From the NCBI RefSeq assembly GCF_902459465.1, contig NC_047068.1:19096001-19160000 (forward strand): 64,000 nucleotides of DNA, read 5' to 3'. The translations under genes and the position numbers were made by a program. Source of the DNA: Asterias rubens. Taxonomy: Eukaryota. Below are positions 28,633-62,702 of the stretch, in pieces; the first letter of the stretch is position 1; each line of letters begins with the position of its first letter. The notes beneath the pieces are model-generated. The model was not told the origin of the DNA and ran no database searches. It was given only the letters and a program-made list of their open reading frames with translations.

Positions 28633-28746
28633 CTATCTCACAGCGAGTACCAGTGAAGCCGGCTCCACACACACACTGATAGGCATTGATCATGTCATTA
28701 CATGTTGCTCCATTCAAACACGGATTGCTTAGGCATTCATTCATAT
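28633..28746 (-). CDS. EGF exon (Ca-binding type)
   Basis: 114 nt; [38 protein letters not shown]. Confidence 0.92.
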
Positions 28747-28796
28747 CTGAAATATACCACCCACATCAAGTATTACAATTAAAAATAATAAAATTT

Positions 28797-28816
28797 GCTT
28801 CCACATTTATTCACAT
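28797..28816 (-). pseudogene. Truncated 5' stub of a cassette D-type exon
   Basis: Intact acceptor then ATGTGAATAAATGTGGAAGC (DVNKCGS), diverging after 20 nt; upstream intron is cassette type. Confidence 0.7.
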
Positions 28817-28898
28817 CTACAACAGAAATATGGAGCATAAAGTTTCTTGAATACAATATCTTCAACAATTAAAAATCAAAATTTGTTTTGACATTTAC

Positions 28899-29012
28899 CT
28901 GTTTGACAGTTGATTCCATTAAATCCTAAAGCACAGTCGCATCTATAACCATTGATCAAGTCAACACAAGTAGCTCCATTCATACACGGAATACTGGAAC
29001 ACTCCAGGATAT
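28899..29012 (-). CDS. EGF exon, cassette A1
   Basis: 114 nt; [38 protein letters not shown]. Confidence 0.88.
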
Positions 29013-29118
29013 CTAGTAAGAAATAAATGAAAATACAAACAATAAATTGTAGAATCAAAAGTCATCACAACGTAAAAGCAAAACACAAAGTAATTGATGG
29101 ACAAGGATTGAACTTTAC

Positions 29119-29232
29119 CATTTTGACAGAATATTCCCTGGTAGCCTGGTGGACAGTCACATCGGTAGCTATTGGGTAAGTCAATACAAGTTGCTCCATT
29201 CTCACATGAATGTGACATACACCCATCAATGT
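29119..29232 (-). CDS. EGF exon, cassette B1
   Basis: 114 nt; [38 protein letters not shown]. Confidence 0.88.
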
Positions 29233-29359
29233 CTAAAATAAAAGACAAGAGATGGTGACGTTTATCAGCAAGTCGACTTAATAACTGAAAGAGATTGACT
29301 AATTGAAACAGGGTATGTTGACAAAAACATTTGCAACAGATCTGTCATATTGTATTTAC

Positions 29360-29473
29360 CTGTTTGACAGAATACACCTGTAAATCCAACTGCACATTGA
29401 CACTGGAATCCATTCACCAAGTCAAGACAAATTCCTCCATTCATACAAGGTGAACTCACACATTCTAATATAT
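29360..29473 (-). CDS. EGF exon, cassette C1
   Basis: 114 nt; [38 protein letters not shown]. Confidence 0.88.
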
Positions 29474-29569
29474 CTGTAAAAACAAATTAATCCAAATATT
29501 AGTAACATTCAAAATGATTTATCAGATTTGAAATTTGTTTGAGACTTCAGAAAATGTATCATCACTAAC

Positions 29570-29683
29570 CTGTTTGACAGAAGGTTCCAGTGTAACCCGC
29601 TGAACACTGACACTGAAAACCATTCACTAAATCCAAGCATGTTCCTCCATTCAAACATGCACTGCTTCCACATTCATCCACAT
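29570..29683 (-). CDS. EGF exon, cassette D1
   Basis: 114 nt; [38 protein letters not shown]. Confidence 0.88.
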
Positions 29684-29808
29684 CTACAACAAAAACATGG
29701 AACAAATATAAAGCTGTGTATGTTTCTTCTGACTTAATTTATAGGGGATGCATGATATCTCTAACATAACATAATGTGCGTATTGTCAATTTATGAATTT
29801 GGCCAAAC

Positions 29809-29922
29809 CTGTTTGACAGTTGATTCCATTAAATCCTAAAGCACAGTCGCATCTATAACCATTGATCAAGTCAACACAAGTAGCTCCATTTATACACGGA
29901 ATACTGGAACACTCCATGATAT
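29809..29922 (-). CDS. EGF exon, cassette A2
   Basis: 114 nt, AG/GT; [16 protein letters not shown]..., A-type. Confidence 0.85.
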
Positions 29923-30044
29923 CTAGTGAGAAATAAATGAAAATACAAACAATAAATTGTAAAATTCAAAACCTTCATGATCAAGAGTCATCACGATGTA
30001 AAAGAACACCACAAAGTAAATGATGAACAAGAAATGGACTTTAA

Positions 30045-30158
30045 CATTTTGACAGAATATTCCCTGGTAGCCTGGTGGACAGTCACATCGGTAGCTATTG
30101 GGCAAGTCAATACAAGTTGCTCCATTCTCACATGAATGTAACATACACCCATCAATGT
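30045..30158 (-). pseudogene. EGF exon, cassette B2, with donor GT changed to TT (probably skipped)
   Basis: CAAAATG|TTAAAG versus CAAAATG|GTAAAG in sister copies; ORF track reads FCQNVKV instead of FCQNGKV. Confidence 0.75.
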
Positions 30159-30323
30159 CTAAAATAAAAGACAAGAGAAATTACTAGCTAAAAATTAAGT
30201 CTCGAATACAAAAAGATGGTGACGTTTATCAGCACGTAGACTTATTAATTGAAACAGATATTCTGTTTGAAACAGGGTATGTTGACCAAAACATTTGCCA
30301 CAGATCTGTAATGTTGTATTTAC

Positions 30324-30437
30324 CTGTTTGACAGAATACACCTGTAAATCCAACTGCACATTGACACTGGAATCCATTCACCAAGTCAAGACAAATTCCT
30401 CCATTCATACAAGGTGAACTCACACATTCTAAAATAT
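30324..30437 (-). CDS. EGF exon, cassette C2
   Basis: 114 nt, AG/GT, C-type. Confidence 0.87.
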
Positions 30438-30536
30438 CTGTTCAAATTGAATAAAAGAAAAGGTTATTTTAGCATGCAAAATGATTTAATGGATTTTAAA
30501 GTTATTTAAAAATTCAGCAAATGTATCATAACCAAC

Positions 30537-30650
30537 CTGTTTGACAGAAGGTTCCTGTGTAACCCGCTGGACACTGACACTGAAAACCATTCACTAAATC
30601 CAAGCATGTTGCTCCATTCAAACATGCACTGCTTCCACATTCATTCACAT
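30537..30650 (-). CDS. EGF exon, cassette D2
   Basis: 114 nt, AG/GT; [16 protein letters not shown]..., D-type. Confidence 0.87.
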
Positions 30651-30778
30651 CTACAATAGAAAACATAAAACAATAACATGGAACATAACATTTCTTGAAT
30701 AACACACCAAGTAAGTTGTTTTATAAATAGCAACGATATATTCAACAAATAAAAATGAAAATTTGTTTTGACATTTAC

Positions 30779-30892
30779 CTGTTTGACAGTTGATTCCATT
30801 AAATCCTAAAGCACAGTCGCATCTATAACCATTGATCAAGTCAACACAAGTAGCTCCATTCATACAAGGAATACTCAAACACTCCAGGATAT
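30779..30892 (-). CDS. EGF exon, cassette A3
   Basis: 114 nt, AG/GT, A-type. Confidence 0.87.
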
Positions 30893-31009
30893 CTAGTGAA
30901 AAATAAATGAAAATAAAAAATTGTAAAATTAAAAACCTTCATGATCAAAAAGTCATTGCGATGTAAAAGAACAACACAAAGTAAATGATGACCAAGAAAT
31001 GGACTTTAC

Positions 31010-31123
31010 CATTTTGACAGAATATTCCCTGGTAGCCTGGTGGACAGTCACATCGGTAGCTATTGGGTAAGTCAATACAAGTTGCTCCATTCTCACATGA
31101 ATGTGACATACACCCATCAATGT
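31010..31123 (-). CDS. EGF exon, cassette B3
   Basis: 114 nt, AG/GT, B-type. Confidence 0.87.
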
Positions 31124-31285
31124 CTAGAAAAGGTGAGGACAAATTATCAGTTAGAAGGGAGTTTTGCAATAACAAATTATTAAAAGATAACTTGTTTTGT
31201 CACGATATTGCCCAGTTTAAATGAAAAGGTTGTTCAGTATGAAACAGGCTATATTTAAAAGAATATAATGCAATGTTGTATTTAC

Positions 31286-31399
31286 CTGTTTGACAGAATA
31301 CACCTGTAAATCCAACTGCACATTGACACTGGAATCCATTCACCAAGTCAAGACAAATTCCTCCATTCATACAAGGTGAACTCACACATTCTAAAATAT
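31286..31399 (-). CDS. EGF exon, cassette C3
   Basis: 114 nt, AG/GT, C-type. Confidence 0.87.
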
Positions 31400-31451
31400 C
31401 TGTTCAAATTTAATAAAAGAAAAAGTTATTTTAGCATGCAAAATGATAGAA

Positions 31452-31689
31452 TGGATTTTAAAGTTGGTTAAGACTTCAGCAAATGTAATTAAACCAACCT
31501 GTTTGACAGAAGGTTCCAGTGTAACCCACTGGATTTTAAAGTTGTTTAAGACTTCAGCAAATGTATTTAAACCAACCTGTTTGACAGAAGGTTCCAGTGT
31601 AACCCACTGGATTTTAAAGTTGTTTAAGACTTCAGCAAATGTATTTAAACCAACCTGTTTGACAGAAGGTTCCAGTGTAACCCACTGGA
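31452..31689. repeat. 78-bp triplication spanning the D3 exon end and donor
   Basis: Units start at 31452, 31530 and 31608, bounded by TGGA microhomology. Confidence 0.92.
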
Positions 31690-31768
31690 CACTGACACTG
31701 AAAACCATTCACTAAATCCAAGCATGTTGCTCCATTCAAACATGCACTGCTTCCACATTCATTCACAT
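31655..31768 (-). CDS. EGF exon, cassette D3
   Basis: 114 nt; [38 protein letters not shown]. Confidence 0.87.
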
Positions 31769-31896
31769 CTACAATAGAAAACATAAAACAATAACATGGA
31801 ACATAACATTTCTTGAATAACACACCAAGTAAGTTGTTTTATAAATAGCAACGATATATTCAACAAATAAAAATGAAAATTTGTTTTGACATTTAC

Positions 31897-32010
31897 CTGT
31901 TTGACAGTTGATTCCATTAAATCCTAAAGCACAGTCGCATCTATAACCATTGATCAAGTCAACACAAGTAGCTCCATTCATACAAGGAATACTCAAACAC
32001 TCCAGGATAT
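31897..32010 (-). CDS. EGF exon, cassette A4
   Basis: 114 nt, AG/GT, A-type. Confidence 0.87.
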
Positions 32011-32132
32011 CTAGTGAGAAATAAATGAAAATACAAACAATAAATTGTAAAATTCAAAACCTTCATGACCAAGAGTCATCACAATGTAAAAGAACACCAC
32101 AAAGTAAATGATGAACAAGAAATGGACTTTAC

Positions 32133-32246
32133 CATTTTGACAGAATATTCCCTGGTAGCCTGGTGCACAGTCACATCGGTAGCTATTGGGTAAGTCAATA
32201 CAAGTTGCTCCATTCTCACATGAATGTGACATACACCCATCAATGT
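32133..32246 (-). CDS. EGF exon, cassette B4
   Basis: 114 nt, AG/GT, B-type. Confidence 0.87.
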
Positions 32247-32411
32247 CTAAAACAAAAAACAAGAGAAATTACTAGCTAGAAATTAAGTCTTGAATACAAA
32301 GAGATGGTGATGTTTATCAGCACGTTGACTTATTAATTGAAAGAGATTGACTGTATGAAACAGGGTATGTTGACAAAAACATTTGCCACAGATCTGTAGT
32401 GTTTTATTTAC

Positions 32412-32525
32412 CTGTTTGACAGAATACACCTGTAAATCCAACTGCACATTGACACTGGAATCCGTTCACCAAGTCAAGACAAATTCCTCCATTCATACAA
32501 GGTGAACTCACACATTCTAAAATAT
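32412..32525 (-). CDS. EGF exon, cassette C4
   Basis: 114 nt, AG/GT, C-type. Confidence 0.87.
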
Positions 32526-32621
32526 CTGCGCAATAAATTGAATCAAAATGTTAGTAACATCCAAACTAATTTATCAGATTTGTAAGTTGTTTATGGCATC
32601 AAAAAATGTATCATCACTTAC

Positions 32622-32735
32622 CTGTTTGACAAAATGTTCCTGTGTAACCCACTGGACACTGACACTGAAAACCATTCACTAAATCCAAGCATGTTGCTCC
32701 ATTCAAACATGCACTGCTTCCACATTCATCCACAT
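32622..32735 (-). CDS. EGF exon, cassette D4
   Basis: 114 nt, AG/GT, D-type. Confidence 0.87.
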
Positions 32736-32855
32736 CTACAACAAAAACATGGAACATAAAATTTCTTGAATTTAAACGCACCAAGTAAGTTTTTTTAAAT
32801 AAATTTCAAAGATATTTCCAACAACTAATAATCAAAAAATAGTTCTGACATTTAC

Positions 32856-32969
32856 CTGTTTGACAGTTGATTCCATTAAATCCTGAAGCACAGTCGCATC
32901 TATAACCATTGATCAAGTCAACACAAGTAGCTCCATTCATACAAGGAATACTCAAACACTCCAGGATAT
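32856..32969 (-). CDS. EGF exon, cassette A5
   Basis: 114 nt, AG/GT, A-type. Confidence 0.87.
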
Positions 32970-33091
32970 CTAGTGAGAAATAAATGAAAATACAAACAAT
33001 AAATTGTAAAATTCAAAACCTTCATGATCAAGAGTCATCACGATGTAAAAGAACACCACAAAGTAAATGATGAACAAGGAATGGACTTTAC

Positions 33092-33205
33092 CAATTTGAC
33101 AGAATATTCCCTGGTAGCCTGGTGGACAGTCACATCGGTAGCTATTGGGTAAGTCAATACAAGTTGCTCCATTCTCACATGAATGTGACATACACCCATC
33201 AATGT
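33092..33205 (-). CDS. EGF exon, cassette B5
   Basis: 114 nt, AG/GT, B-type. Confidence 0.87.
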
Positions 33206-33362
33206 CTGAAGCAAAAGAAAAGAGAAATTACTAGCTAGAAATTTAGCCACAACTTGCAACTATACTTGTTCAATCAAAAAAGTTAAGTTGCTAAGAAGCA
33301 AACGTTTAAAAGAGGCAAAGTTGAAAAGGATATTTGCCACAGATCTGTCATGTTGTATTTAC

Positions 33363-33476
33363 CTGTTTGACAGAATACACCTGTAAATCCAACTGCACAT
33401 TGACACTGGAATCCATTCACCAAGTCAAGACAAATTCCTCCATTCATACAAGGTGAACTCACACATTCTAAAATAT
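33363..33476 (-). CDS. EGF exon, cassette C5
   Basis: 114 nt, AG/GT, C-type; upstream duplicated acceptor discussed in findings. Confidence 0.85.
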
Positions 33477-33533
33477 CTGCGCAATAAATTGAATTAAAAT
33501 ATAAGTAACATCCAAAATGATTTATTAGAGTGG

Positions 33534-33578
33534 AAATTCCTCCATTCATACAAGGTGAACTCACACATTCTGAAATAT
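33534..33578 (-). pseudogene. Duplicated 5' half of a C-type exon with intact acceptor
   Basis: [15 protein letters not shown], then intron sequence reading in frame into C5. Confidence 0.8.
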
Positions 33579-33674
33579 CTGTACAACAAATTGAATTAAA
33601 ATATCAGTAACATCCAAAATGATTTATCAGATTAGTAAGTTGTTAAAGGCATCAAAAAATGTATCATCACTAAC

Positions 33675-33788
33675 CTGTTTGACAGAAGGTTCCTGTGTAA
33701 CCCGCTGGACACTGACACTGAAAACCATTCACTAAATCCAAGCATGTTGCTCCATTCAAACATGCACTGCTTCCACATTCATTCACAT
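33675..33788 (-). CDS. EGF exon, cassette D5
   Basis: 114 nt, AG/GT, D-type. Confidence 0.87.
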
Positions 33789-33914
33789 CTACAACAAAAA
33801 CATAGAACAGATATAAAGCTGTGTATGTTTCGTACCGACTTAATTTATATGGAATGCATGATATCTCTAACATAACATAATGTGTGCATTATCAATATAT
33901 GAATTTGGCCTAAC

Positions 33915-34028
33915 CTGTTTCACAGTTGATTCCATTAAATCCTAAAGCACAGTCGCATCTATAACCATTGATCAAGTCAACACAAGTAGCTCCATTCATA
34001 CACGGAATACTCAAACACTCCAGGATAT
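33915..34028 (-). CDS. EGF exon, cassette A6
   Basis: 114 nt, AG/GT, A-type. Confidence 0.87.
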
Positions 34029-34131
34029 CTAGTAAGAAATAAATGAAAATAATAATAGTAAATTGCAGAATCAAAAGTCATCACGACGTTAAAGGAAAAC
34101 ACAAAGTAATTGGACAATGAATAGACTTTAC

Positions 34132-34245
34132 CATTTTGACAGAATATTCCCTGATAGCCTGGTGGACAGTCACATCGGTAGCTATTGGGTAAGTCAATAC
34201 AAGTTGCTCCATTCTCACATGAATGTGACATACACCCATCAATGT
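34132..34245 (-). CDS. EGF exon, cassette B6
   Basis: 114 nt, AG/GT, B-type. Confidence 0.87.
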
Positions 34246-34418
34246 CTGGAAGAGGCAAAGACAAATTATCAGTTAGAAGGGAGTTTTGCAATAACAAATT
34301 ATAAAAAGATAACTTGTTTTGTCACGATATTGCCCAGTTTAAATGAAAAGGTTGTTCAGTATGAAACAGGCTATATTTAAAAGAATATAATGCAATGGAT
34401 CTTTAATATTGTAATTAC

Positions 34419-34532
34419 CTGTTTGACAGAATACACCTGTAAATCCAACTGCACATTGACACTGGAATCCATTCACCAAGTCAAGACAAATTCCTCCATT
34501 CATACAAGGTGAACTCACACATTCTAAAATAT
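34419..34532 (-). CDS. EGF exon, cassette C6
   Basis: 114 nt, AG/GT, C-type. Confidence 0.87.
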
Positions 34533-34631
34533 CTGATCAAATTGATTAAAAGAAAAAGTTATTTTAGCATGCAAAATGATAGAATGGATTTTAAAGTTGT
34601 TTAAGACTTCAGCAAATGTATTTAAACCAAC

Positions 34632-34745
34632 CTGTTTGACAGAAGGTTCCTGTGTAACCCGCTGGACACTGACACTGAAAACCATTCACTAAATCCAAGC
34701 ATGTTGCTCCATTCAAACATGCACTGCTTCCACATTCATCCACAT
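34632..34745 (-). CDS. EGF exon, cassette D6
   Basis: 114 nt, AG/GT, D-type. Confidence 0.87.
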
Positions 34746-34872
34746 CTACAACAAAAACATGAAACAAAAACATGGAACATAAAATTTCTTGAATAACACA
34801 CCAAGTAAGTTATTTTATAAATATCAACGATATCTTCAACAATTAAAAATGCAAATTTGTTCTGGCATTTAC

Positions 34873-34986
34873 CTGTTTGACAGTTGATTCCATTAAATCC
34901 TAAAGCACAGTCGCATCTGTAACCATTGATCAAGTCCACACAAGTAGCTCCATTCATACAAGGAATACTCAAACACTCCAGGATAT
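34873..34986 (-). CDS. EGF exon, cassette A7
   Basis: 114 nt, AG/GT, A-type. Confidence 0.87.
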
Positions 34987-35101
34987 CTAGTGAAAAATAA
35001 ATGAAAATAAAAAATTGTAGAATTCAAAACCATGAAGATCAAGAGTCATCCGTTGGAACAGAACAACACAAAGTAAATGATGAACAAGGAATGGACTTTA
35101 C

Positions 35102-35215
35102 CATTTTGACAGAATATTCCCTGATAGCCTGGTGGACAGTCACATCGGTAGCTATTGGGTAAGTCAATACAAGTTGCTCCATTCTCACATGAATGTGACA
35201 TACACCCATCAATGT
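35102..35215 (-). CDS. EGF exon, cassette B7
   Basis: 114 nt, AG/GT, B-type. Confidence 0.87.
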
Positions 35216-35372
35216 CTGAAGCAAAAGAAAAGAGAAATTACTAGCTAGAAATTTAGCCACAACTTGCAACTATACATGTTCAATCAACAAAGTTAAGTTG
35301 TTAAGAAGCAAACGTTTAAAAGAGGCAAAGTTGAAAAGGATATTTGCCACAGATCTGTCATGTTGTATTTAC

Positions 35373-35486
35373 CTGTTTGACAGAATACACCTGTAAATCC
35401 CACTGCACATTGACACTGGAATCCATTCACCAAGTCAATACAAATTCCTCCATTCATACAAGGTGAACTCACACATTCTGAAATAT
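35373..35486 (-). CDS. EGF exon, cassette C7
   Basis: 114 nt; [38 protein letters not shown]. Confidence 0.87.
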
Positions 35487-35582
35487 CTGTACAACAAATT
35501 GAATTAAAATGTTAGTAACATCCAAAATGATTCATCAGATTAGTAAGTTGTTAAAGGCATCAAAAAATGTATCATCACTAAC

Positions 35583-35696
35583 CTGTTTGACAGAAGGTTC
35601 CTGCGTAACCCGCTGGACACTGACACTGAAAACCATTCACTAAATCCAAGCATGTTGCTCCATTCAAACATGCACTGCTTCCACATTCATTCACAT
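35583..35696 (-). CDS. EGF exon, cassette D7
   Basis: 114 nt, AG/GT, D-type. Confidence 0.87.
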
Positions 35697-35822
35697 CTAC
35701 AACAAAAACATAGAACAGATATAAAGCTGTGTATGTTTCGTACTGACTTAATTTATATGGAATGCATGATATCTCTAACATAACATAATGTGTGCATTAT
35801 CAATATATGAATTTGGCCTAAC

Positions 35823-35936
35823 CTGTTTGACAGTTGATTCCATTAAATCCTGAAGCACAGTCGCATCTATAACCATTGATCAAGTCAACACAAGTAGCTC
35901 CATTCATACACGGAATACTGGAACACTCCAGGATAT
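35823..35936 (-). CDS. EGF exon, cassette A8
   Basis: 114 nt, AG/GT, A-type. Confidence 0.87.
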
Positions 35937-36042
35937 CTAGTGAGAAATAAATGAAAATACAAACAATAAATTGTAGAATCAAAAGTCAGCACAATGTAAA
36001 AGGAAAGCAAAAAGTAAATGATGACCAAGAAATGGACTTTAC

Positions 36043-36156
36043 CATTTTGACAGAATATTCCCTGAAAGCCTGGTGGACAGTCACATCGGTAGCTATTGGG
36101 TAAGTCAATACAAGTTGCTCCATTCTCACATGAATGTGACATACACCCATCAATGT
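36043..36156 (-). CDS. EGF exon, cassette B8
   Basis: 114 nt, AG/GT, B-type. Confidence 0.87.
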
Positions 36157-36309
36157 CTGAAAAAAGGGTGAGTGAACAATTACTGGCTAGGAAATAATTT
36201 TCATTTATACTTATTGTTCAATCAACAAAGTTAAGTTGTAAAGAAGCAAATGTTTGAAACAGGCAAGGTTGAAAATATATTTGCCACAGATTTTGAATGT
36301 TGTGTTTAC

Positions 36310-36423
36310 CTGTTTGACAGAATACACCTGTAAACCCAACTGCACATTGACACTGGAATCCGTTCACTAAGTCAAGACAAATTCCTCCATTCATACAAGG
36401 TGAACTCACACATTCTAAAATAT
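36310..36423 (-). CDS. EGF exon, cassette C8
   Basis: 114 nt, AG/GT, C-type. Confidence 0.87.
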
Positions 36424-36520
36424 CTGCGCAATAAATTGAATTAAAATATAAGTAACATCCAAAATGATTTATTAGATTGGAAATTTGTTTGAGAATTCCG
36501 AAAAATGTATTATTACCAAC

Positions 36521-36634
36521 CTGTTTGACAGAAGGTTCCTGTGTAACCCGCTGGACACTGACACTGAAAACCATTCACTAAATCCAAGCATGTTGCTCCA
36601 TTCAAACATGGACTGCTTCCACATTCATTCACAT
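36521..36634 (-). CDS. EGF exon, cassette D8
   Basis: 114 nt; [16 protein letters not shown]..., D-type. Confidence 0.87.
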
Positions 36635-36761
36635 CTACAGCAACAAAATGGAACACATATAAAGCTGTGTATGTTTCGTACTGACATAATTTAAGTGGGA
36701 TGCATCATATCTCTTAACATAACATAATTAGTGCATTATCAATGTAGGAAGTTGGCCTAAC

Positions 36762-36875
36762 CTGTTTGACAGTTGATTCCATTAAATCCTAAAGCACAGT
36801 CGCATCTATAACCATTGATCAAGTCAACACAAGTAGCTCCATTCATACATGGCAGGCTGACACATTCCAAAATGG
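36762..36875 (-). CDS. EGF exon, A-type with divergent 5' end
   Basis: 114 nt; [37 protein letters not shown]. Confidence 0.88.
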
Positions 36876-37402
36876 CTGTAATGTAAATAAAGGAAACAAG
36901 AACAAAGTTACTTTTAAAAACAAAGTGCAGGAAGTAGCATTCATTTCATCAGTAACGCCACAAACAGACAAAAAGAAAAGGAAAAGAAGAAGTGAAAAAA
37001 TAGGTGCAGAATAATTAAATTATTTTATTTGTTTCATCGCATTTCCAATAACACAAGCGCCAAAAACAGAACAAATAGGAGACAACGAAGACATTTCCAG
37101 TTTCAGATGTAGGAGGAAAACCCCATTCGAGGAAAACCCACATGCAAGGCTTCAGTCTGAGGTGGGATGCGAACCGGGTCCACAGAAGTGAGACACAGAA
37201 GAAGAAAAAAAACCACTAAGCCAAACTGATCCCACATAAACAAACAACCAAATAAACCTAAAAATTGCTGCAAAAGATCCCAAGCACACAATAGCAATGA
37301 ACAAAAACTTTACAGCATAAACAACCATTTCAATTGACAAACATACCGGCCACATTGATGCTCCCATTCCCAGCTTTAATTCCTCATACCCAAAACTATC
37401 TT

Positions 37403-38130
37403 CTACACATCCCCTACCCCTTAAGCCGTTGGACTTTTTCTTCCGCTGCTATGCAGAAAGTTACATGTACCGTGCCTAGCTTTGGTCATTCGTACCCCGC
37501 TTGACTTATAATTCCACGACATTTGCATAGCCTTTTACAGCGTGGTTGCGCTAAGTTTACAGCATGGAGCTGTTCCCATTGTACTTTTAGCAGCCCTGTT
37601 AAGTGACTGTGGCTGCGCGGAACTCTTCCGTGACCTCTTTTCACCTGTTAGTTTTACATCATGGTCATGGTAAGTTTACCTTTGCATCCCCATTGGAATC
37701 GCAGTACTTTAACAAACAAAAAAGTCCAATGGGAACATGGCATCTACATGTATACCCTCAGTCTCCTCTAGCTTCCTTCTCCTTCATTGTACTGTTATAG
37801 TGAGCACACACTCCCCACCCACACCCAGTGGGTTTCAATAGGTTAAGTCCCAGCTCCAGCCTTTATTCTTCACCGAGCTACGCCCAGCTTATCTAGTTCC
37901 TGTTCCCGTCATCCCGCACCACCGAGCCAAGCCCATCTACCAGTTAATCCCAAACAAGGCAGTACATAAGCAGCATCCAGCAACATAGTCCAGCATTCTC
38001 CTGAAGACGATCAGAGCACACTGATCGAAACGTCAAGTCGTAAACCACTGGTTCTTTTTAGAACCAACATTACTCAAAAGACATATTCACATGGTGCTAC
38101 CGCAAACCTTTCTTAGTTATTCTTCCACCA
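37403..38130 (+). mobile_element. 728-bp insertion with a hammerhead motif, flanked by 31-bp direct repeats (Penelope-like/retrozyme-like)
   Basis: AGCTTTAATTCCTCATACCCAAAACTATCTT at 37372-37402 and 38131-38161. Confidence 0.7.
37996..38037 (+). ncRNA. Minimal type I hammerhead-ribozyme motif, near intact
   Basis: TTCTC CTGAAGA C GATCAG-AGCACA-CTGATC GAAAC GTC AAG: full core, 6-bp stem II, palindromic ACGT stem III, GUC triplet; stem I has a C-A mismatch. Confidence 0.75.
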
Positions 38131-38163
38131 AGCTTTAATTCCTCATACCCAAAACTATCTTAC

Positions 38164-38277
38164 AATTTTGACAGAATATTCCCTGATAGCCTGGTAGACA
38201 GTCACATCGGTAGCCACTGGGTAAGTCAATACAAGTTGCTCCATTCTCACATGAATGTGATACACAATCATTAATGT
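38164..38277 (-). CDS. EGF exon, B-type (older copy)
   Basis: 114 nt; [38 protein letters not shown]. Confidence 0.9.
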
Positions 38278-38622
38278 CTATAGTGGTAAACATAATATGA
38301 GTAAATAGTGATGAAGGATGTTAGAATAAATAAGACCTTATTCAATATTCATAAATACCTCATACAGTTTCGCTATTCCTATTGGTGGAGAGCGCGTCTT
38401 GTGGGGGTGTTTAAACGGTTGATAATGACTAGATGCAGCTGTTTATAACCGGTTGTTTTGGGATACATTAAGATGCATACTACACGCACGAATGTATATC
38501 CGAAAACTGTCTCAGTCATACAAATGCAACACACGTACAGATCTCAAGGATAAGTTTTACAGAGTTCCTGTACTTTATTATGCCTTTTAACCAAAACGGT
38601 ATTTCTGAATGGGAATAAATAA

Positions 38623-38764
38623 GTAGTGATTTGTTCTTAAACTGCCGTTTAAAACCTTGCAGGATCGTGGCCGTGCGATGAAGGCCCTCGCTTTCTGCTA
38701 GGGCCTTTATCGCACGGCCACGACCCTGCCGGTATTAACTGGCAGTTTAAGAACTCGTCACTAC
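38623..38764. mobile_element. Foldback/MITE-like palindrome
   Basis: GTAGTGA...TTCTTAAACTGCC...GGATCGTGGCCGTGCGAT / ATCGCACGGCCACGACC...GGCAGTTTAAGAA...TCACTAC. Confidence 0.8.
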
Positions 38765-39356
38765 CCTTTTATTCCCTTATTTACAGCCAAACTCAGGGCA
38801 CTTGGAATCACACCTAACAAAAAATACATGCAAATTAGCACAAACTCAAACAAAACATACTGATATACATATACATGTATATGGAGTAATTCTGGTGGGA
38901 GACTGCAGTCAATTAAACTCAATAATATAATAATAACATCAGGTTCTTGTATAGCACTTTGTTACACCCAGGGGCATAAACAAGTTTTTTTTCCTGCAAA
39001 GTATTGTGGAGCAATGTTTTTCAAGAATGAGGCCTACTCCTTTACATAGGCAAATTCATGGTTCACAATATGCAGCCAATCAAACCAGCAACACCAGGGT
39101 GAACCCATTCTCATTACGATACATGTAAGTGCACTGGGTTCTTTTACATGCATTACACAACGCACAGGACCAATTACTGTACATGTACATCCCTTCCGAA
39201 AGATGACCGGGACTCCAACCCACACTCTGCTGAGCAGAACTTGCGCATATATGCACAGTACTGTCTGCCACTGTACATGCCATATTTATTTTGTTTATTT
39301 GCGAGAAGCCACCCACTAAGGCACGGAAATAAAAAAAACATCAGTTGTATAAAACA

Positions 39357-39593
39357 ATGGACCCTTTCAATGATATGTCAATTGCACATTGCGCGTGCGC
39401 ACTAACACATTGCGTGTGCGCACTAACACTTGGCAAAATGAGGGAACATCGCGCTGTTTTGTACATGGCTAATGGCTGCGTGGCGCAGACGCGATTGTGC
39501 GTCTGCTTAGTGCACAACTCTATGGCGTTTGCCAACCAATAGGGTCTGTACGCATGCGTGAATGTAATTAGCATATTTCATGAAAAGGGTCCA
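39357..39593. mobile_element. MITE (related copy near 52210-52440)
   Basis: TIR AATGGACCCTTT / AAAGGGTCCATT. Confidence 0.7.
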
Positions 39594-39630
39594 TTATACG
39601 TAAGAGGTAGACTCATACACATGTACTTAC

Positions 39631-39738
39631 TTCTATCACAAAGGTCCCCAGTAAAGCCAGCTGCACATTGACATTGGAAACCATTGATCATATCAACGCA
39701 GACAGCTCCATTGAAGCATGGTAGACTTTCACATGCAC
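39631..39738 (-). CDS. EGF exon
   Basis: 108 nt; [35 protein letters not shown]. Confidence 0.88.
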
Positions 39739-40366
39739 CTGCAATTACAACAAGTCATTGGGTTGATCAAGCAATCTTTAATAATAATTATAATAATTTG
39801 GGAGGCTAATCATCCTTACTCGCAGCTAACAGCTGAATTGCAAAGGATACGGCTACGTGTTCAAGAAGCAGGCATGCAAGGGCACCTTTGGCTGCCAGCC
39901 ACATCTACCTATTATGACCACGGAGCACAGCCAGAGATTGAAAGTGTTTGATTTTTCCCAAGGGAAGAAAACCAGATGGTATGGGAAAACCCTCGTGGCA
40001 CAGCAGAGAACTAACGCGCAACTCATAACAGATGACCCATTGACCATCGTGATCATTACGTTAACACTCAGTGACCATGGAACAAGACAAATTAAAACCG
40101 GATGTTAGAGTAATGGGGTCGCGTCTGCTTTGATCTCTTAAAACCTAAGATAAACTGTATCAGGTTTAACTCAGTGATGTCTGAACGCAAGGGGAACAAC
40201 TTTTTACAACCACCTCGCAAGTTAAACCAGTTTGGGTCTAACAACACTGTCTGAACATACCCTATTTCAAAGTATTAAGGATTTGAACTGCCTTTAGTCT
40301 ACTGTCTCTACACACATCTGTGTAAACAAAATATATGTTAATGTTATTTGCGTTGCATTCACCAAC

Positions 40367-40480
40367 CTGTTTGACAGAAGGTTCCTGTGTAACCCGCTGG
40401 ACACTGACATTGAAAACCATTCACTAAATCCAAGCATGTTGCTCCATTCAAACATGCACTGCTTCCACATTCATTCACAT
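40367..40480 (-). CDS. EGF exon, D-type
   Basis: 114 nt, [20 protein letters not shown]... Confidence 0.88.
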
Positions 40481-40606
40481 CTACAACAAAAACATGGAAC
40501 AAATATAAAGCTGTGTATGTTTCGTACTGACATAATTTAAGTGGGATGCATCATATCTCTTAGAAAATATAATGTGTGTATTGTCAATGTAGGAAGTTAG
40601 CCTAAC

Positions 40607-40720
40607 CTGTTTGACAGTTGATTCCATTAAATCCTGAAGCACAGTCGCATCTATAACCATTGATTAAGTCAACACAAGTAGCTCCATTCATACACGGAAT
40701 ACTCAAACACTCCATGATAC
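40607..40720 (-). CDS. EGF exon, A-type
   Basis: 114 nt; [24 protein letters not shown]... Confidence 0.88.
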
Positions 40721-40842
40721 CTGAGGACAAATATGTCAAAATACCAACAATTACCAAAAAAATTCCATACCTTCATGATCACAAGTCAGCAAAATGTAAA
40801 AGGAAAGCAAAAAGTAAATGATGACCAAGAAATGGACTTTAC

Positions 40843-40956
40843 CATTTTGACAGAATATTCCCTGAAAGCCTGGTGGACAGTCACATCGGTAGCTATTGGG
40901 TAAGTCAATACAAGTTGCTCCATTCTCACATGAATGTGACATACACCCATCAATGT
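40843..40956 (-). CDS. EGF exon, B-type
   Basis: 114 nt; [38 protein letters not shown]. Confidence 0.88.
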
Positions 40957-41232
40957 CTGGACAAAAGGTAAACATTTTTGTATTATTGAAAGCTTTAACA
41001 TCTGAGCTTTCTAAGGTCACGTTGCAGGGGAATAAATAATGGAAACAATCACAATAATAACTTGGGAGGCTAATTATCCTTACTCGCAGCTAAGAGCTAA
41101 TTGCGAAGGACGCGGCTACAACGTGTTCGAGAAGCAGGCACCCATTATGACCACGAATCACAGCCAGAGATCGAAAGTGTTTGATTTTTTCAGATGGTCT
41201 GGGAAACGTAAAGTATCCCAAACATGACTAAC

Positions 41233-41346
41233 CTGTTTCACATAGACTCCCTGTGTATCCACTTGAGCATGCACACTGGAAACCATTCACTGAATCTAAA
41301 CAAACTCCTCCGTTCATACATGGGAAACTCACACATTCATTGAGAT
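41233..41346 (-). CDS. EGF exon, C-related
   Basis: 114 nt; [38 protein letters not shown]. Confidence 0.9.
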
Positions 41347-41452
41347 CTAGCAGGAAAATGGAAGCACAAAATAATGACAAGTAAAAGAATGCACTATGAC
41401 TATGGGATTTGAGGCATTGCATGTTGAGGTATCAATGTATATTTGGTTTGCG

Positions 41453-41839
41453 TTAAAGGCAGTGGACACTATTGGTAATTACTCAAAATATTTATCATCA
41501 TAAAATCTTTCTTGATTACATGTAATGGGGAGAGATAGATGGTATAAAACATTGTGAGAAACAGCTTCCTCTGAAGTGACGTAGTTTTCGAGAAAGAAGT
41601 AATTTTCTACGAATTTGATTTCGAGACCTAAAGTTTAGAATTTGAGGTCTCGAAATCAAGCATCAAAAAGCACATAACTTTGTGTGACAAGGGTGTTTTT
41701 TTCTTTCATTATTACCTCGCAACTTCAATGACCGATTGAGCTCAAATTTTCACAGGTTTGTTTTTGTATGCATATGTTGAGATACACCAACTGTGAAGAC
41801 TAGTCTTTGAATATTACAAATAGTGTCCACTGTCTTTAA
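41453..41839. mobile_element. TTAA-flanked MITE (Kolobok-like)
   Basis: TTAAAGGCAGTGGACACTATT...AATAGTGTCCACTGTCTTTAA. Confidence 0.8.
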
Positions 41840-42004
41840 TACCATGTGTTTAGATTATGTTCTTAAAGAATTGTCTTGCTATTAGTCTACAGCCTCATAC
41901 CCTCGCTCCTCTCCTGTATGTAGTTAATTCCTAGTTATTTATATAATGCTTGCTTTAACATTATATTAATTTTGTATTCTTTTAGCCGCTTTTGATTTTG
42001 ATTT

Positions 42005-42213
42005 TTGAGGTTGAACAAAGAATTGACTAGAGTGGGATTCGAACCAACGACCTCGGTATTAACGTGCCGGCGCTCTACCAACTGAGCTATCTAGCCCTAT
42101 ATTGGCGGTGTCCCTATTTTGTCAATATCTTTGTTCGGGGTGCCAGTCAGAAGCCATACAACCGTTAACTGCCGTGTAGCCAGGGATCACACCCAAATTA
42201 AGATACAACCTGG
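42005..42213 (-). mobile_element. Repeat with internal tRNA-like module (310-318-bp family), partial
   Basis: Ends at GATACAACCTGG, as does the copy at 10953. Confidence 0.78.
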
Positions 42214-42460
42214 CTTTTGATTTTGTTACATGTACCTCTCTTTGTACTGATGAATTCTCTTGTTGTACTATTTTCCAACTACAGTGTAGAATAAACGTCT
42301 TATTGAATTGAATTGAATTTTTTTTGGGGGGGGGGAATTCAGGAGACTTCTCTATTCCCGCAGAGTAGATTTTTGGAGTTCCAGGCATCTCAGTTCTGAA
42401 AAGAACTGTCCTGCTTTTTATCTACTATCTTGGCGTCAATGTAGGTAGGAAATTGGCTGA

Positions 42461-42647
42461 GACTTTCACTTAGTGGATCGAAGGGACTTCTCATTATTAA
42501 CTTCACTACTGCGGAGTGAGCTCTGTGTTCATGGCATGAAGGCATTCAATCAAGACTTTCACTTAGTGGATCCAAGGGACTTCTCATTATTAACTTCACT
42601 ACTGCGGAGTGAGCTCTGTGTTCATGGCATGAAGGCATTCAATCAAG
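42461..42647. repeat. 93-bp direct tandem duplication
   Basis: GACTTTCACTTAGTGGATC at 42461 and 42554. Confidence 0.9.
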
Positions 42648-42662
42648 TGTTGCTACCATTAC

Positions 42663-42776
42663 CTGTTTGACAGAATACACCTGTAAATCCAACTGTACAT
42701 TGACACTGGAATCCATTCACCAAGTCCAGACAGGTTCCTCCATTCAAACAAGGTGAACTTACACACTCTAAAATAT
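42663..42776 (-). CDS. EGF exon, C-type
   Basis: 114 nt; [38 protein letters not shown]. Confidence 0.9.
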
Positions 42777-42911
42777 CTGTAAATGCAAATATTAACATAA
42801 TTTTCAAAATTGATTACAATTATTACAGTTTCATAGTAAAAGAATGAAGACCTAAGAAAATAAACATTGAATTGATGGTACATGTAGTTAGAACAATCAA
42901 GCTCAACAAAC

Positions 42912-43025
42912 CTGTTTGACAATTGATTCCATTAAATCCTAAAGCACAGTCGCATCTATAACCATTGATCAAGTCAACACAAGTAGCTCCATTCATACAA
43001 GGAACACTGGAACACTCCATGATAC
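42912..43025 (-). CDS. EGF exon, A-type
   Basis: 114 nt; [37 protein letters not shown]. Confidence 0.9.
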
Positions 43026-43259
43026 CTGAGAATAATAAAGATAAAATATGAGAGGATAATAACAACAACAATAATATTAATAAAGACTTGTAATGCCCAC
43101 ATATCCACCCTGTTGGACGTTCAAGGCACAGTAAAAAAAATATTTAAAAAACAGTGGTAGAGAGTTGCAGATGTGCGGCGCAGCTGAATAAAAAGACCTG
43201 TCACCCCAGGAGTGTCAAGAGATTAGTTCATTGAAGAGAAGCATGGTACTGGATCAAAT

Positions 43260-43620
43260 AATAGTAATAATAACCCGTTTGTATATAGCGCTTTTCACAC
43301 CCGGAGGGCGTCCCAAAGCGCTTCACATTATTACCCCTGGTCACAGGGCCTTAATTCACTCCTTAAACCATCTGAGCTCCCTGGTGGGGAGTATACAGCC
43401 TTGTGCAACATTAATATGCGCTACTCGGCTAAATCAATCACAACCACCACCCCTGCCGTCACAGGTACCCATTTACCCCTGGGTGGAGAGAAGCAATTAT
43501 AGTTAAGTGTCTTGCTCAGGGACACAAGCGACACGACTGGGATTCGAACTCACACTCTGCTGAACAGAAGCACCAGAGCTTGAGTTCGGTGCTCTAATCC
43601 GCTCGGCCACAACACGACAT
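43260..43620 (-). mobile_element. tRNA-derived CORE-like SINE, near full length
   Basis: A-box GTGGCCGAGCGG, B-box GAGTTCGAATCCC, core TGTGTCCCTGAGCAAGACACTTAAC. Confidence 0.8.
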
Positions 43621-43629
43621 TCCTTGACG

Positions 43630-43925
43630 GTGTCTATTAAAGATATAGTTCTGCTTCGTCTCACCCCAACACTCTTGATCTGCTTAGATGTAGAACAAGG
43701 AGCCATTCCAACAGCTTTATTCCATGTACTGCATCTCTTTGGAACTCCTTGCCTGGTGCATGTTTCCCTCCATCCTACAATCTAGACTGTTTTAAGAGGC
43801 ATATAACATCCTACCTTCAGCTCCCCTGAGTTTTGTTCACATTTAATAATTTTTCTTCTTGTAGCACCATACTAAGAGTGGCTTTTAGCCTTTTTAAGGG
43901 CGAACTTGCATAACAAAAAAATAAT
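43630..43925 (+). mobile_element. CR1/Jockey-group LINE 3' fragment
   Basis: RTRSHSNSFIPCTASLWNSLPGACFPPSYNLDCFKRH. Confidence 0.7.
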
Positions 43926-44008
43926 TAATGGTAGAATTTATAACCTACGTGATCAAAAGTCAACACCATTCAAAAGAACAACACAATTGAAAAGGGAATA
44001 AACTTTAC

Positions 44009-44122
44009 CAATTTGACAGAATATTCCCTGATAGCCTGGTGCACAGTCACATCGGTAGCTATTGGGTAAGTCAATACAAGTTGCTCCGTTCTCACATGAA
44101 TGTGACATACACTCATCAACGC
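44009..44122 (-). CDS. EGF exon, B-type
   Basis: 114 nt; [37 protein letters not shown]. Confidence 0.9.
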
Positions 44123-44199
44123 CTGAACAAAAAAAGATGGGGGAAAAATATATGCAGTTATAAATTAAGCCTCATCATTCAATTGAAAAGAGGTTAAGT

Positions 44200-44520
44200 T
44201 TTGGCAGATATATCTGGCGCAAACCCTCAGAGCGCTGATTGGCAACAGGTGGGGTCTCTCTGCCAACACAATCATGGATCAAAAAGCCGCTTGGCTTGGC
44301 CATGCAGTACGCCAAGGTGGTCTTGCAGCAGCAGTGCTAGATGGAACCCCACTTGGACACCGTCGCGAGGTTACACGACCGAAACTCCACTGGGTCGGCA
44401 GCCCCACCAGGTGAAGTGGCCTCAGTGTGGTTGAACTAACTACAGCAACCCTACAGTGACACAAAATCACCCCTGCACCAGCCACACAACCCAGTAGAAG
44501 AGGACGGTTGATGTGTCAAC
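44200..44520 (+). mobile_element. RTE-like LINE 3' fragment
   Basis: KAAWLGHAVRQGGLAAAVLDGTPLGHRREVTRPKLHW resembles the RTE WLGH..R...G.R..GRP..W motif. Confidence 0.6.
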
Positions 44521-44626
44521 GGGCAGTAGCCTACATTGATTGCTGATAAGTTCTTTTATCTAAGAATCATGTTTGGAACGGTCTGTTTTTCAAAAAGATA
44601 TATTCAACAAATATGGTTTTGTTTAC

Positions 44627-44740
44627 CTATTTCACAGAATAAACCTGTAAATCCAACTGCACATTGACACTGGAATCCATTCACCAAGTCAAGACAAGTT
44701 CCTCCATTCGAACATGCACTGCTTTCACACTCATTCACCT
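44627..44740 (-). CDS. EGF exon, D/C hybrid
   Basis: 114 nt; [38 protein letters not shown]. Confidence 0.9.
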
Positions 44741-62690: not shown

Positions 62691-62702
62691 TATCTTTGAC
62701 TT

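What the first reader, a model, noticed from the sequence alone, without database searches (positions are those of the whole stretch)
28797..44740. Young tandem amplification of a four-exon EGF cassette
A D-C-B-A block of about 0.91-0.97 kb repeats 8 times with nearly identical exons and short (~95-180 nt) introns. Older, TE-interrupted copies of the same exon types continue to 44.7 kb. Whole exon-intron modules were amplified, adding 152 aa per step. Inference: an unequal-crossover-driven, probably copy-number-polymorphic protein ruler; it could also be a substrate for cassette-level alternative splicing.
Basis: partly seen in the sequence, partly recalled or inferred. Interest (0 to 1): 0.7.

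Follow-up and report, generated by a model that had tools for sequence, protein, structure and literature searches.

The report
Amplified four-EGF exon cassette array
A gene for a giant EGF-repeat protein, probably from a sea star, carries eight tandem copies (plus three older ones) of a four-exon cassette whose exons stay almost identical while the introns between them have drifted far apart, so this is an ordinary kind of repeat expansion that evolves in concert rather than being simply young.

Summary
The whole window is one minus-strand gene with about 112 EGF domains. From 28.9 to 36.6 kb it holds 8 tandem A-B-C-D cassettes: 32 exons, each 114 nt and phase 1-1, adding 152 aa per cassette. 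Eleven more exons of the same types, in introns loaded with transposable elements, run to 44.7 kb. RNA contigs show the cassette exons spliced D>A>B>C at the predicted borders.

The "young amplification of whole modules" reading is only partly right. Exon copies are 97-98% identical (pS 0.05). The introns average 25% mismatch and fall into 2-3 deep, position-specific classes that are shuffled among the units. Only 10% of third codon positions vary, against 49% of ungapped intron columns (P 1e-18). The nearest relative of a unit changes every few hundred bases, and a recombination test is significant. One hybrid exon and one truncated exon stub lie at the array edges.

Best reading: an old array kept uniform by repeated unequal crossover or gene conversion anchored in the exons. 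An environmental contig allelic to one older cassette carries the other intron class between identical exons.

Copy-number polymorphism, cassette skipping and a "ruler" role remain untested. This is a new member of a known kind and of modest interest.

The parts
28899..36634 (-). Compact array of 8 A-B-C-D cassettes (32 exons of 114 nt). In transcript order: U1 35823-36634, U2 34873-35696, U3 33915-34745, U4 32856-33788, U5 31897-32735, U6 30779-31768, U7 29809-30650, U8 28899-29683.
   Evidence: Exon table with splice sites; self-BLAST; Pfam EGF/hEGF on each exon type; RNA contig with four contiguous 114-nt blocks D-A-B-C (X18 record 21).
36762..36875 (-). Exon D0v, just upstream of U1. It is a hybrid: the first 26 nt carry 11 differences from the D consensus and the last 88 nt carry none. 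This marks an exchange endpoint inside an exon. The alpha-class D>A intron follows.
   Evidence: Variant table; intron comparison.
38164..44740 (-). Three older cassettes, 10 exons: C0v 38164-38277, X0 39631-39738 (108 nt, divergent B-position exon), A0w 40367-40480, D0z 40607-40720, C0z 40843-40956, AB0z 41233-41346 (divergent), B0y 42663-42776, D0y 42912-43025, C0x 44009-44122, A0x 44627-44740 (A/B intermediate). One B-position exon is missing.
   Evidence: Identity to the type consensus is 0.90-0.99 for recognisable copies and 0.65-0.82 for X0, AB0z and A0x.
40359..40968 (-). Block C0z-D0z-A0w inside the 'older' zone. It is as similar to the compact units (91-95%) as they are to each other. 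The allelic metagenome contig L001 carries the other (beta) intron class between D0z and A0w.
28795..28816 (-). 22-nt stub of a ninth A exon (2 mismatches to the A start), preceded by a beta-type D>A intron remnant and an AG. It now lies inside the D8>E1 intron and marks the truncated 3' edge of the array.
   Evidence: Alignment of D>A introns; sequence; BLAST 29663-29701 vs 28796-28834.
30043..30044 (-). Donor dinucleotide of exon C7 reads TT instead of GT. It is the only non-canonical splice site among the 43 cassette exons.
   Evidence: No RNA contig was laid on 29700-30299 (C7, D7) in three RNA runs; those runs come from other samples, so this is not conclusive.
31452..31689 (-). 78-bp x3 tandem duplication spanning the last 31 nt of exon A6, its donor and 47 nt of intron. 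It gives three identical donor sites. Using the second or third runs into a stop codon.
   Evidence: TRF; reading in transcript orientation.
33432..33631 (-). 102-bp x2 tandem duplication spanning the acceptor and first 45 nt of exon B4. It creates an upstream decoy acceptor. Using it would add 34 codons without a stop.
   Evidence: TRF.
41997..42213 (-). tRNA-derived SINE copy in the B0y>AB0z intron (tRNA-like head at 42024-42096). Sister copies lie at 10757-10954, 53991-54206, 54309-54524 and 62695-62908.
26315..28746 (-). Unique downstream EGF exons E1 28633-28746, E2 27115-27228 and E3 26315-26428. One 3517-nt RNA contig joins them at these borders.
   Evidence: (X20 record 22).

Best explanation
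The stretch is the middle of a transcribed gene for a giant secreted or surface EGF-repeat protein. The window alone holds at least 112 EGF domains. Earlier notes of this scan name the genome as Asterias rubens; I did not verify that.

A four-EGF unit (exon types A, B, C and D, which are 61-70% alike at the DNA level and therefore old relative to each other) was amplified as an exon-intron module. There are now 11 cassettes. Every exon is 114 nt and phase 1-1, so any gain or loss of exons keeps the reading frame.

The array is not simply young. It evolves in concert. The 114-nt exons are the only long tracts of near-identity, so they act as the homology anchors for unequal crossover and gene conversion. 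These exchanges keep the exons uniform and shuffle the intervening introns. The introns have diverged into 2-3 old classes per position.

Shown here: the anatomy, transcription and splicing, the exon/intron contrast, the mosaic structure and the recombination signal.

Inferred: that exchange endpoints lie in exons, that homogenisation rather than selection alone keeps synonymous sites uniform, and that the protein product is a longer EGF rod (+4 EGF per cassette).
For: Anatomy.

Transcription and splicing: RNA contigs cover exactly the predicted exons. One 486-nt contig is D-A-B-C in four contiguous 114-nt blocks, and one 3517-nt contig joins E1-E2-E3.

Exon/intron contrast:
- Exon identity is 97.1-98.4%; intron identity is 68-89% by position.
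- pS is 0.049 and pN is 0.015, against intron mismatch of 0.249.
- 10% of third codon positions vary, against 49% of ungapped intron columns (Fisher P 1e-18). More than half of intron columns are gapped.
- Identity falls from 0.93-1.00 to 0.45-0.7 within 8-16 nt of the exon edges.
- B3, B4, B6 and B7 are identical over 114 nt, although their flanking introns belong to different classes.

Intron classes are position-specific, are not TE-derived and never match introns at other positions.

Mosaic and recombination:
- The class combinations AB x BC and BC x DA occur in all or nearly all pairings.
- The nearest unit changes every 200-700 columns.
- 52% of informative site pairs fail the four-gamete test. 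Local incompatibility is 0.343 against 0.522 after permutation, P<0.0005.

Recent exchange: a 333-bp identical tract spans D, an intron and A in neighbouring units.

Endpoints in exons: the hybrid exon D0v and the A-exon stub at the 3' edge.

Polymorphism: metagenome contig L001 matches the window's C0z-D0z-A0w region at 98.7% and 96.7% in the flanks and 100% in exons D0z and A0w. Its D>A intron is beta class where the window has alpha, and the switch falls exactly at the two exon borders.
Against: - Selection on exon nucleotides (splicing enhancers, codon use) could add to the low synonymous divergence. pN/pS of about 0.3-0.4 shows that purifying selection does act.
- Cassette exons in RNA and DNA from other samples are just as conserved: 97-100% in L002, whose introns are 82-97%. 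This fits selection as well as conversion.
- No species comparison could be made, so the classical signature of concerted evolution (copies more alike within a species than between species) is untested.
- L001 and L002 are 1-kb metagenome contigs. At low coverage, a path through shared exon words could be chimeric.
- Mismatch figures for introns of different classes are inflated by forced alignment.
- Exon sites are few: 31 variable sites.
Confidence: 0.7

Rival explanations
1. Simple young amplification: whole exon-intron modules were copied recently and have since diverged neutrally.
For: Intron homology is position-specific. Some unit pairs are close throughout: for U2-U4, intron mismatch is 0.06 and pS is 0.044. 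There is a 333-bp identical tract and a best long match of 96% over 718 bp.
Against: Most unit pairs have introns 4-8 times more diverged than synonymous sites. The B>C and D>A introns fall into classes that BLAST cannot align, while the exons between them are identical. No single duplication tree fits the units.
Confidence: 0.08
2. Old amplification with strong purifying selection on the exons and no homogenising exchange. The introns simply decayed.
For: pN/pS is about 0.3-0.4 and no cysteine or consensus residue is hit. Exons are equally conserved in contigs from other samples. The drop in identity at exon borders is sharp.
Against: Protein-level selection does not protect third positions (10% variable against 49% in introns). 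The older cassette exons (C0v, D0v 5' part, C0x, D0y, B0y) did diverge by 6-10%, so the sequence is not intrinsically frozen. The intron classes are mosaically recombined and the PHI-like test is significant. The hybrid exon D0v and the 333-bp identical tract also argue against it.
Confidence: 0.17
3. Assembly artefact: one or a few cassettes were expanded by mis-assembly.
For: Tandem repeats are error-prone in assemblies. The DNA run that holds the window best may be the assembly's own sample.
Against: No two units are identical; the closest long match is 96%. Every unit has its own combination of intron classes. There are no gaps in the region. DNA contigs carry unit-specific intron pieces with 0 mismatches (X1 records 6-8). 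Two metagenome contigs from other samples show multi-exon cassettes. RNA word depth on cassette exons is 2-8 times that on unique exons.
Confidence: 0.02
4. The array is a copy-number-polymorphic length module ('ruler'), and cassettes are skipped in blocks by alternative splicing.
For: All exons are symmetric and phase 1-1. Exchange is recent. L001 gives a possible allelic intron-class swap. A DNA contig joint goes back 1992 bases (32284 to 30293, weak). C7 has a dead donor, and no RNA contig carries the C7- or D7-specific sequences.
Against: No individual with a different cassette number was seen. No exon-skipping joint was seen. The RNA contigs are consensus cassettes and cannot be assigned to particular copies. 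Only the A-type EGF has the full calcium-binding motif, and Pfam EGF_CA scores are below the cut-off for all four types, so a stiff rod is not assured.
Confidence: 0.3

Closest known systems
LPA kringle IV type 2 VNTR (human)
   Same: A multi-exon protein-domain module amplified in tandem inside a gene. It changes protein length in frame. Repeat subtypes are defined by a few exonic and many intronic variants (PMC11201333).
   Different: KIV-2 units are about 5.6 kb with two exons and are nearly identical, introns included, with up to 40 copies per allele. Here the units are about 0.95 kb with four exons, and the introns have diverged into classes that no longer align while the exons stay uniform. 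Copy-number polymorphism is not shown here.
NEB triplicate region (nebulin exons 82-105)
   Same: A block of several exons repeated in tandem. High exon homology promotes misalignment and unequal recombination. The length of the protein has functional meaning (PMC7863720).
   Different: Nebulin is intracellular and its repeats are actin-binding. Its copy-number variation is documented. Here the length-function link is only conjecture.
Drosophila dumpy
   Same: A huge extracellular matrix protein gene with many EGF modules spread over many exons (PMC2930355). It is cited as a repeat protein whose repeat number varies within populations and is homogenised by recombination (PMC5100051).
   Different: Dumpy alternates EGF with DPY modules, and its variable part is a different repeat. 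No homology beyond the EGF fold was found here; the best hits are 46-54% identical generic EGF proteins.
Sea-urchin fibropellins and 'fibropellin-1-like' / 'Notch-like' annotations in echinoderms
   Same: Echinoderm extracellular proteins built from long runs of Notch-type EGF repeats. The database names of the best hits are of this kind. From my own knowledge, not checked here: the sea-urchin uEGF gene has one EGF per exon and transcripts with different repeat numbers.
   Different: The defining non-EGF domains cannot be seen, because the window holds only EGF exons. No close homologue was found.
[quoted passage not shown]
   Same: High repeat purity together with recombination signals, as in the class described in PMC5100051, where it is called the exception rather than the norm.
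   Different: That survey works on protein or cDNA repeats. Here the contrast between homogenised exons and diverged, shuffled introns is visible directly in genomic DNA.

Membership tests
EGF-like domain (Pfam PF00008 / hEGF PF12661) | Six cysteines in the C-x-C-x-C-x-CxC-x-C pattern and a score above the Pfam gathering cut-off | tested here: met
   All 43 cassette exons match the six-Cys pattern. For exon types A-D, EGF scores are 38-46 bits (cut-off 21.5) and hEGF scores are 37-42 bits (cut-off 29.3).
Calcium-binding EGF (Pfam PF07645) | N-terminal D/N-x-D/N-E/Q motif and a score above the cut-off (27 bits) | tested here: not met
   EGF_CA scores are 17.6-22.5 bits, below the cut-off for all four types. 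Read directly from the sequence, only type A has D-V-N/D-E-C. Types B and D have D-I-L-E-C and type C has D-I-D-G-C.
Tandem intragenic exon-cassette amplification (protein-coding VNTR type) | Head-to-tail copies of a multi-exon unit with preserved frame and position-specific intron homology | tested here: met
Tandem intragenic exon-cassette amplification (protein-coding VNTR type) | Copy number varies between individuals | not testable with these tools
   Only one read-laying run was allowed, the runs are kept as short contigs, and no long reads were available.
Concerted evolution of repeats | Recombination or mosaic signal among the repeat copies | tested here: met
   52% of site pairs fail the four-gamete test and the PHI-like test gives P<0.0005. 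See also the mosaic nearest-unit map and the hybrid exon D0v.
Concerted evolution of repeats | Paralogous copies more alike within a species than orthologous copies between species | not testable with these tools
   No sister-species locus could be fetched. The metagenome scan was blank, and L001 and L002 have unknown species of origin.
Notch receptor / fibropellin | Non-EGF signature domains (LNR, NOD and ankyrin for Notch; CUB and avidin-like for fibropellin) | not testable with these tools
   The window holds only EGF exons and the gene ends lie outside it. The database names of the hits are generic.

The most novel reading that the evidence does not exclude
Exchange in this array is confined to exon-sized homology islands. 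Individuals would then carry different numbers of cassettes and different intron-class orders, while all EGF exons stay uniform. This would be a self-reinforcing, exon-only concerted evolution that makes the length of a giant extracellular EGF rod a polymorphic, selectable trait. The intron-class swap in L001 would be the first glimpse of it.
Probability: 0.3. Interest if true: 0.5.

Novelty: new member of a known kind. Interest (0 to 1): 0.3.

Why it matters
This is a clean genomic example of how modular extracellular proteins grow. Symmetric phase 1-1 EGF exons are amplified as a four-exon cassette and then kept uniform by exchange that spares the introns. For annotators it is a warning: near-identical exons do not mean a recent duplication, and gene models and short-read assemblies will miscount such cassettes. 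If cassette number proves variable, the locus would offer a natural series of rod lengths in an echinoderm matrix or surface protein. It does not open a new kind of biology.

Tried and rejected
1. Non-homologous exon pairing (for example A with B) as the source of the intron classes: rejected. Introns never match introns at other positions.
2. Intron classes as TE insertions: rejected. Cassette introns have no match elsewhere in the window.
3. Finding the gene's name or orthologues:
   - The 756-aa intronless exon gave only generic EGF proteins at 54% identity or less.
   - An exhaustive HMMER search with exon C8 gave no protein that holds the cassette peptides; the best match to a single EGF was 60-75%.
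   - The footprint-protein paper has no supplementary sequences held.
4. An exact-match scan of JGI metagenome contigs with a 42-nt exon C word was blank.
5. Rfam and tRNA scans found no intronic RNA gene in the compact array, only SINE heads outside it.
6. The DNA contig joint 32284>30293 was considered as evidence of an extra copy. I set it aside: the side is only 48 nt, the letters in between are unknown, and both ends lie in introns of the same class.
7. The placement of the RNA contig's C block on C8 rather than C7 was considered as evidence of skipping. I rejected it: C6 and C8 are identical to the consensus, so the placement is arbitrary.
8. A look-up of the second ORF called on L002 failed because of stop codons in the given frame.
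9. RNA-templated (cDNA) conversion as the cause of exon-only homogenisation: no adjacent cassette exons are fused, so there is no support for it.


Full report
**1. What is there**

A regular-expression scan for the six-cysteine EGF pattern in all six frames gives 113 hits. Of these, 112 lie on the minus strand and are spread over the whole 64 kb. The window is therefore an internal part of one very large EGF-repeat gene.

In most of it, one EGF equals one exon. Two long intronless runs of EGF units lie upstream in the transcript, at 54886-57153 and 61220-61891. They belong to another finding of this scan.

Self-BLAST of 28797-29796 finds head-to-tail copies every 0.95 kb or so up to 36896, and scattered pieces up to 44750. 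There is no N run in the stretch.

**2. Exon model**

Every EGF core in 26-47 kb is flanked by an AG 11 nt upstream and a GT 7 nt downstream. This gives 114-nt exons that begin with the last two bases of an Asp codon, so both borders are phase 1.

In transcript order, the compact array is eight times A-B-C-D: 32 exons from 36634 down to 28899.

- Introns are 96-173 nt, except for two of 198 and 255 nt.
- Units measure 937-1118 bp.
- The only non-canonical splice site is the donor of C7, which reads TT.
- Each exon type scores above the Pfam cut-offs for EGF and hEGF, but below the cut-off for calcium-binding EGF.
- Only type A has the full D-x-D/N-E motif.
- The four types are only 61-70% identical to each other in DNA. 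The cassette was therefore assembled from old, diverged EGF exons before it was amplified.

**3. Older copies**

Upstream in the transcript lie 11 more exons of the same types, between 36762 and 44740. They amount to three cassettes with one B-position exon missing and two B-position exons strongly diverged.

Their large introns (504-1353 nt) hold short interspersed repeats that recur in other introns of the window. One has a tRNA-like head. Relatives of two of these repeats have word depths thousands of times the single-copy level in a DNA run.

The zone is not uniformly old. The block C0z-D0z-A0w (40359-40968) is 91-95% identical to the compact units, with exons 96-99% identical to the consensus.

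**4. It is transcribed and spliced as modelled**

Sequencing-run searches found DNA and RNA holders from marine animals under coded names.

- RNA contigs cover exons and not introns.
- A 3517-nt contig joins E1, E2 and E3 exactly at the predicted borders.
- A 486-nt contig consists of four contiguous 114-nt blocks in the order D-A-B-C.
- Word depth on cassette exons (46-236) exceeds that on unique exons (6-45). This is expected if several near-identical copies are in the mRNA, but it is not a count.
- These contigs carry consensus exons, so they cannot be assigned to particular cassettes. No statement on skipping is possible.
- No RNA contig lay on the C7- or D7-specific sequences. The RNA comes from other samples, so this is only a hint.

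**5. Exons and introns tell different stories**

| Measure | Exons | Introns |
|---|---|---|
| Mean identity across the eight copies | 97.1-98.4% | 68-89% by position |
| Differences from type consensus | 0-4 nt of 114 | – |
| Divergence | pS 0.049, pN 0.015 | mean aligned mismatch 0.249 |
| Variable sites | 10% of third codon positions | 49% of ungapped columns |

- The difference in variable sites gives Fisher P 1e-18. More than half of the intron columns are gapped.
- Some intron pairs are only 54-63% identical.
- Identity drops from 0.93-1.00 inside exons to 0.45-0.7 within 8-16 nt outside them.

The introns fall into deep classes that are specific to their position:

- two for A>B;
- three for B>C, alignable to each other only over about 30 nt;
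- two for D>A;
- C>D is one graded family.

They match nothing else in the window and never match introns at other positions. They are therefore neither TE insertions nor products of pairing between non-homologous exons.

Exon B is identical over 114 nt in U3, U4, U6 and U7, although the introns around it belong to different classes. A recent copying of whole modules followed by neutral decay cannot produce this.

**6. The units are mosaics**

The closest relative of each intron is only 0-5% diverged, but the partner differs from intron to intron:

- U2 with U4 from exon A to the B>C intron;
- U3 with U6 in A>B and B>C;
- U4, U5 and U7 in C>D;
- U5 with U6, and U1 with U3, in D>A.

Almost all combinations of classes at neighbouring positions occur. 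Of 104 informative biallelic sites, 52% of pairs fail the four-gamete test. Neighbouring sites are much more compatible than permuted ones: 0.343 against 0.522, with none of 2000 permutations as low.

Long matches occur at offsets of 1, 2, 3 and 4 units. The longest exact tract is 333 bp and spans exon D, an intron and exon A of neighbouring units, so exchange has continued until very recently.

Two footprints place exchange endpoints inside exons:

- Exon D0v has 11 differences in its first 26 nt and none in the remaining 88 nt.
- The D8>E1 intron contains a beta-type D>A intron remnant followed by the first 22 nt of an A exon. This is a truncated ninth cassette.

Smaller tandem duplications of 78 and 102 bp across exon-intron borders show that the region also slips at shorter scales.

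**7. Other samples**

Two searches with ORFs that read through exon plus intron each found one 1-kb ENA marine-metagenome contig.

*L001* is collinear with the window's C0z-D0z-A0w region.

- Its first 181 nt are 100% identical to the upstream intron.
- It is 98.7% identical over its first 534 nt and 96.7% over the last 365 nt.
- Exons D0z and A0w are 100% identical, including their private variants.
- The intron between them is beta class, where the window has alpha. The switch falls exactly at the two exon borders.

This is what an exchange with both endpoints inside exons would leave. If it is real, the class at an anchored position differs between individuals. The caveat is that a low-coverage metagenome assembly could thread a chimeric path through shared exon words.

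*L002* holds C-D-A-B-C and is 93.4% identical to U7-U8. Its exons are 98-100% identical to window exons and its introns 82-97%. Its A>B intron is of the other class.

Both contigs independently confirm the cassette layout.

**8. Reading**

The best account is an old array in concerted evolution. Unequal crossover and gene conversion start and end in the exon islands of identity. They keep those islands uniform, change cassette number and shuffle the diverged introns.

Purifying selection also acts: pN/pS is about 0.3-0.4 and no cysteine is hit. Selection alone does not explain the uniform third positions, the mosaic structure or the hybrid exon. The older cassette exons did drift by 6-10%.

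I could not run the classical between-species test, so I put this reading at about 0.7.

An assembly artefact is very unlikely. No two units are identical, and DNA contigs carry unit-specific intron pieces.

**9. Function**

The product is 32 (43 with the older copies) Notch-type EGF domains within a protein of more than 112 EGFs.

By direct reading, the exons carry:

- the C-x-S-x-P/A-C motif (types A, B and D);
- the C-x4-S/T-C motif (types A, C and D);
- the Asp/Asn-hydroxylation pattern.

These motifs are known from Notch-type EGFs. That comparison rests on established knowledge and was not tested here.

A spacer or rod role is the natural inference, but it is only an inference. Pfam does not class these as calcium-binding EGFs, so stiffness is not assured.

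No close homologue was found. Database names of distant hits are 'fibropellin-1-like' and 'Notch-like'. Earlier notes of this scan call the genome Asterias rubens. That is consistent with the marine runs and echinoderm hits, but I did not verify it.

**10. Comparison and verdict**

Known relatives in kind are:

- the LPA KIV-2 VNTR (PMC11201333);
- the NEB triplicate region (PMC7863720);
- dumpy (PMC2930355);
- more generally, the rare class of domain repeats shaped by concerted evolution (PMC5100051).

The difference here is the strength of the contrast: exons are homogenised while introns have diverged into shuffled classes.

This is a new member of a known kind. It is a tidy example, not a surprise. 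Copy-number polymorphism, block skipping and a ruler function remain open and need long reads.

Noticed in passing
window 54886-57153 and 61220-61891 (minus strand): Two long single exons hold 20 and 6 EGF units with a 114-nt period and no introns. The units are nearly identical to each other. The same gene therefore expanded EGFs in two ways, with and without introns. This belongs to another finding of the scan (s1-178744).
   Followed up: partly
window 31452-31689: A 78-bp unit (the last 31 nt of exon A6, the GT donor and 47 nt of intron) is present three times, giving three identical donor sites. Only the first keeps the frame open.
   Followed up: yes
window 33432-33631: A 102-bp unit (the acceptor, the first 45 nt of exon B4 and intron) is present twice. 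The upstream decoy acceptor would add 34 codons without a stop, encoding a broken half-EGF.
   Followed up: yes
window 30043-30044 (exon C7 30045-30158): The donor reads TT instead of GT in one cassette. C7 also carries a private Ser>Leu change. No RNA contig from three runs of other samples lay on C7 or D7. This copy may be skipped or dead in this haplotype.
   Followed up: partly
window 27300-27900 and 28300-28500: The intron E1>E2 holds interspersed repeats with word depth of 4e4 to 8e5 in a DNA run whose single-copy depth is about 140. That implies thousands of genomic copies. They are also abundant in the RNA runs.
   Followed up: no
window 54109-54181 and 54427-54499 (+), 42024-42096, 62722-62792, 10780-10852 (-): There are five tRNA-like matches. 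Two read as tRNA-Asn(GTT). They sit at the head of a 215-bp repeat present at least five times in the introns of this gene, so they are likely a tRNA-derived SINE family rather than tRNA genes.
   Followed up: partly
window 3643-3687 (-): An Rfam histone 3' stem-loop match sits exactly at the gathering score (34.1 against 34 bits), inside an intron region of the EGF gene. It is probably chance or part of a repeat.
   Followed up: no
window 41054-41189 vs 39790-39956: The intron after exon AB0z and the intron after exon A0w share two pieces at 88-92% identity. This suggests that AB0z descends from an A-type exon, or that the older cassettes were themselves duplicated as a block.
   Followed up: no
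L002 (ENA metagenome contig, 1013 bp): The gene caller's first ORF (3-416) translates with 5 stop codons in the frame given by the tool. The record is marked 'does not translate to the query' for the ORF asked for, so the coordinates or the genetic code of the stored gene call seem to be off.
   Followed up: no
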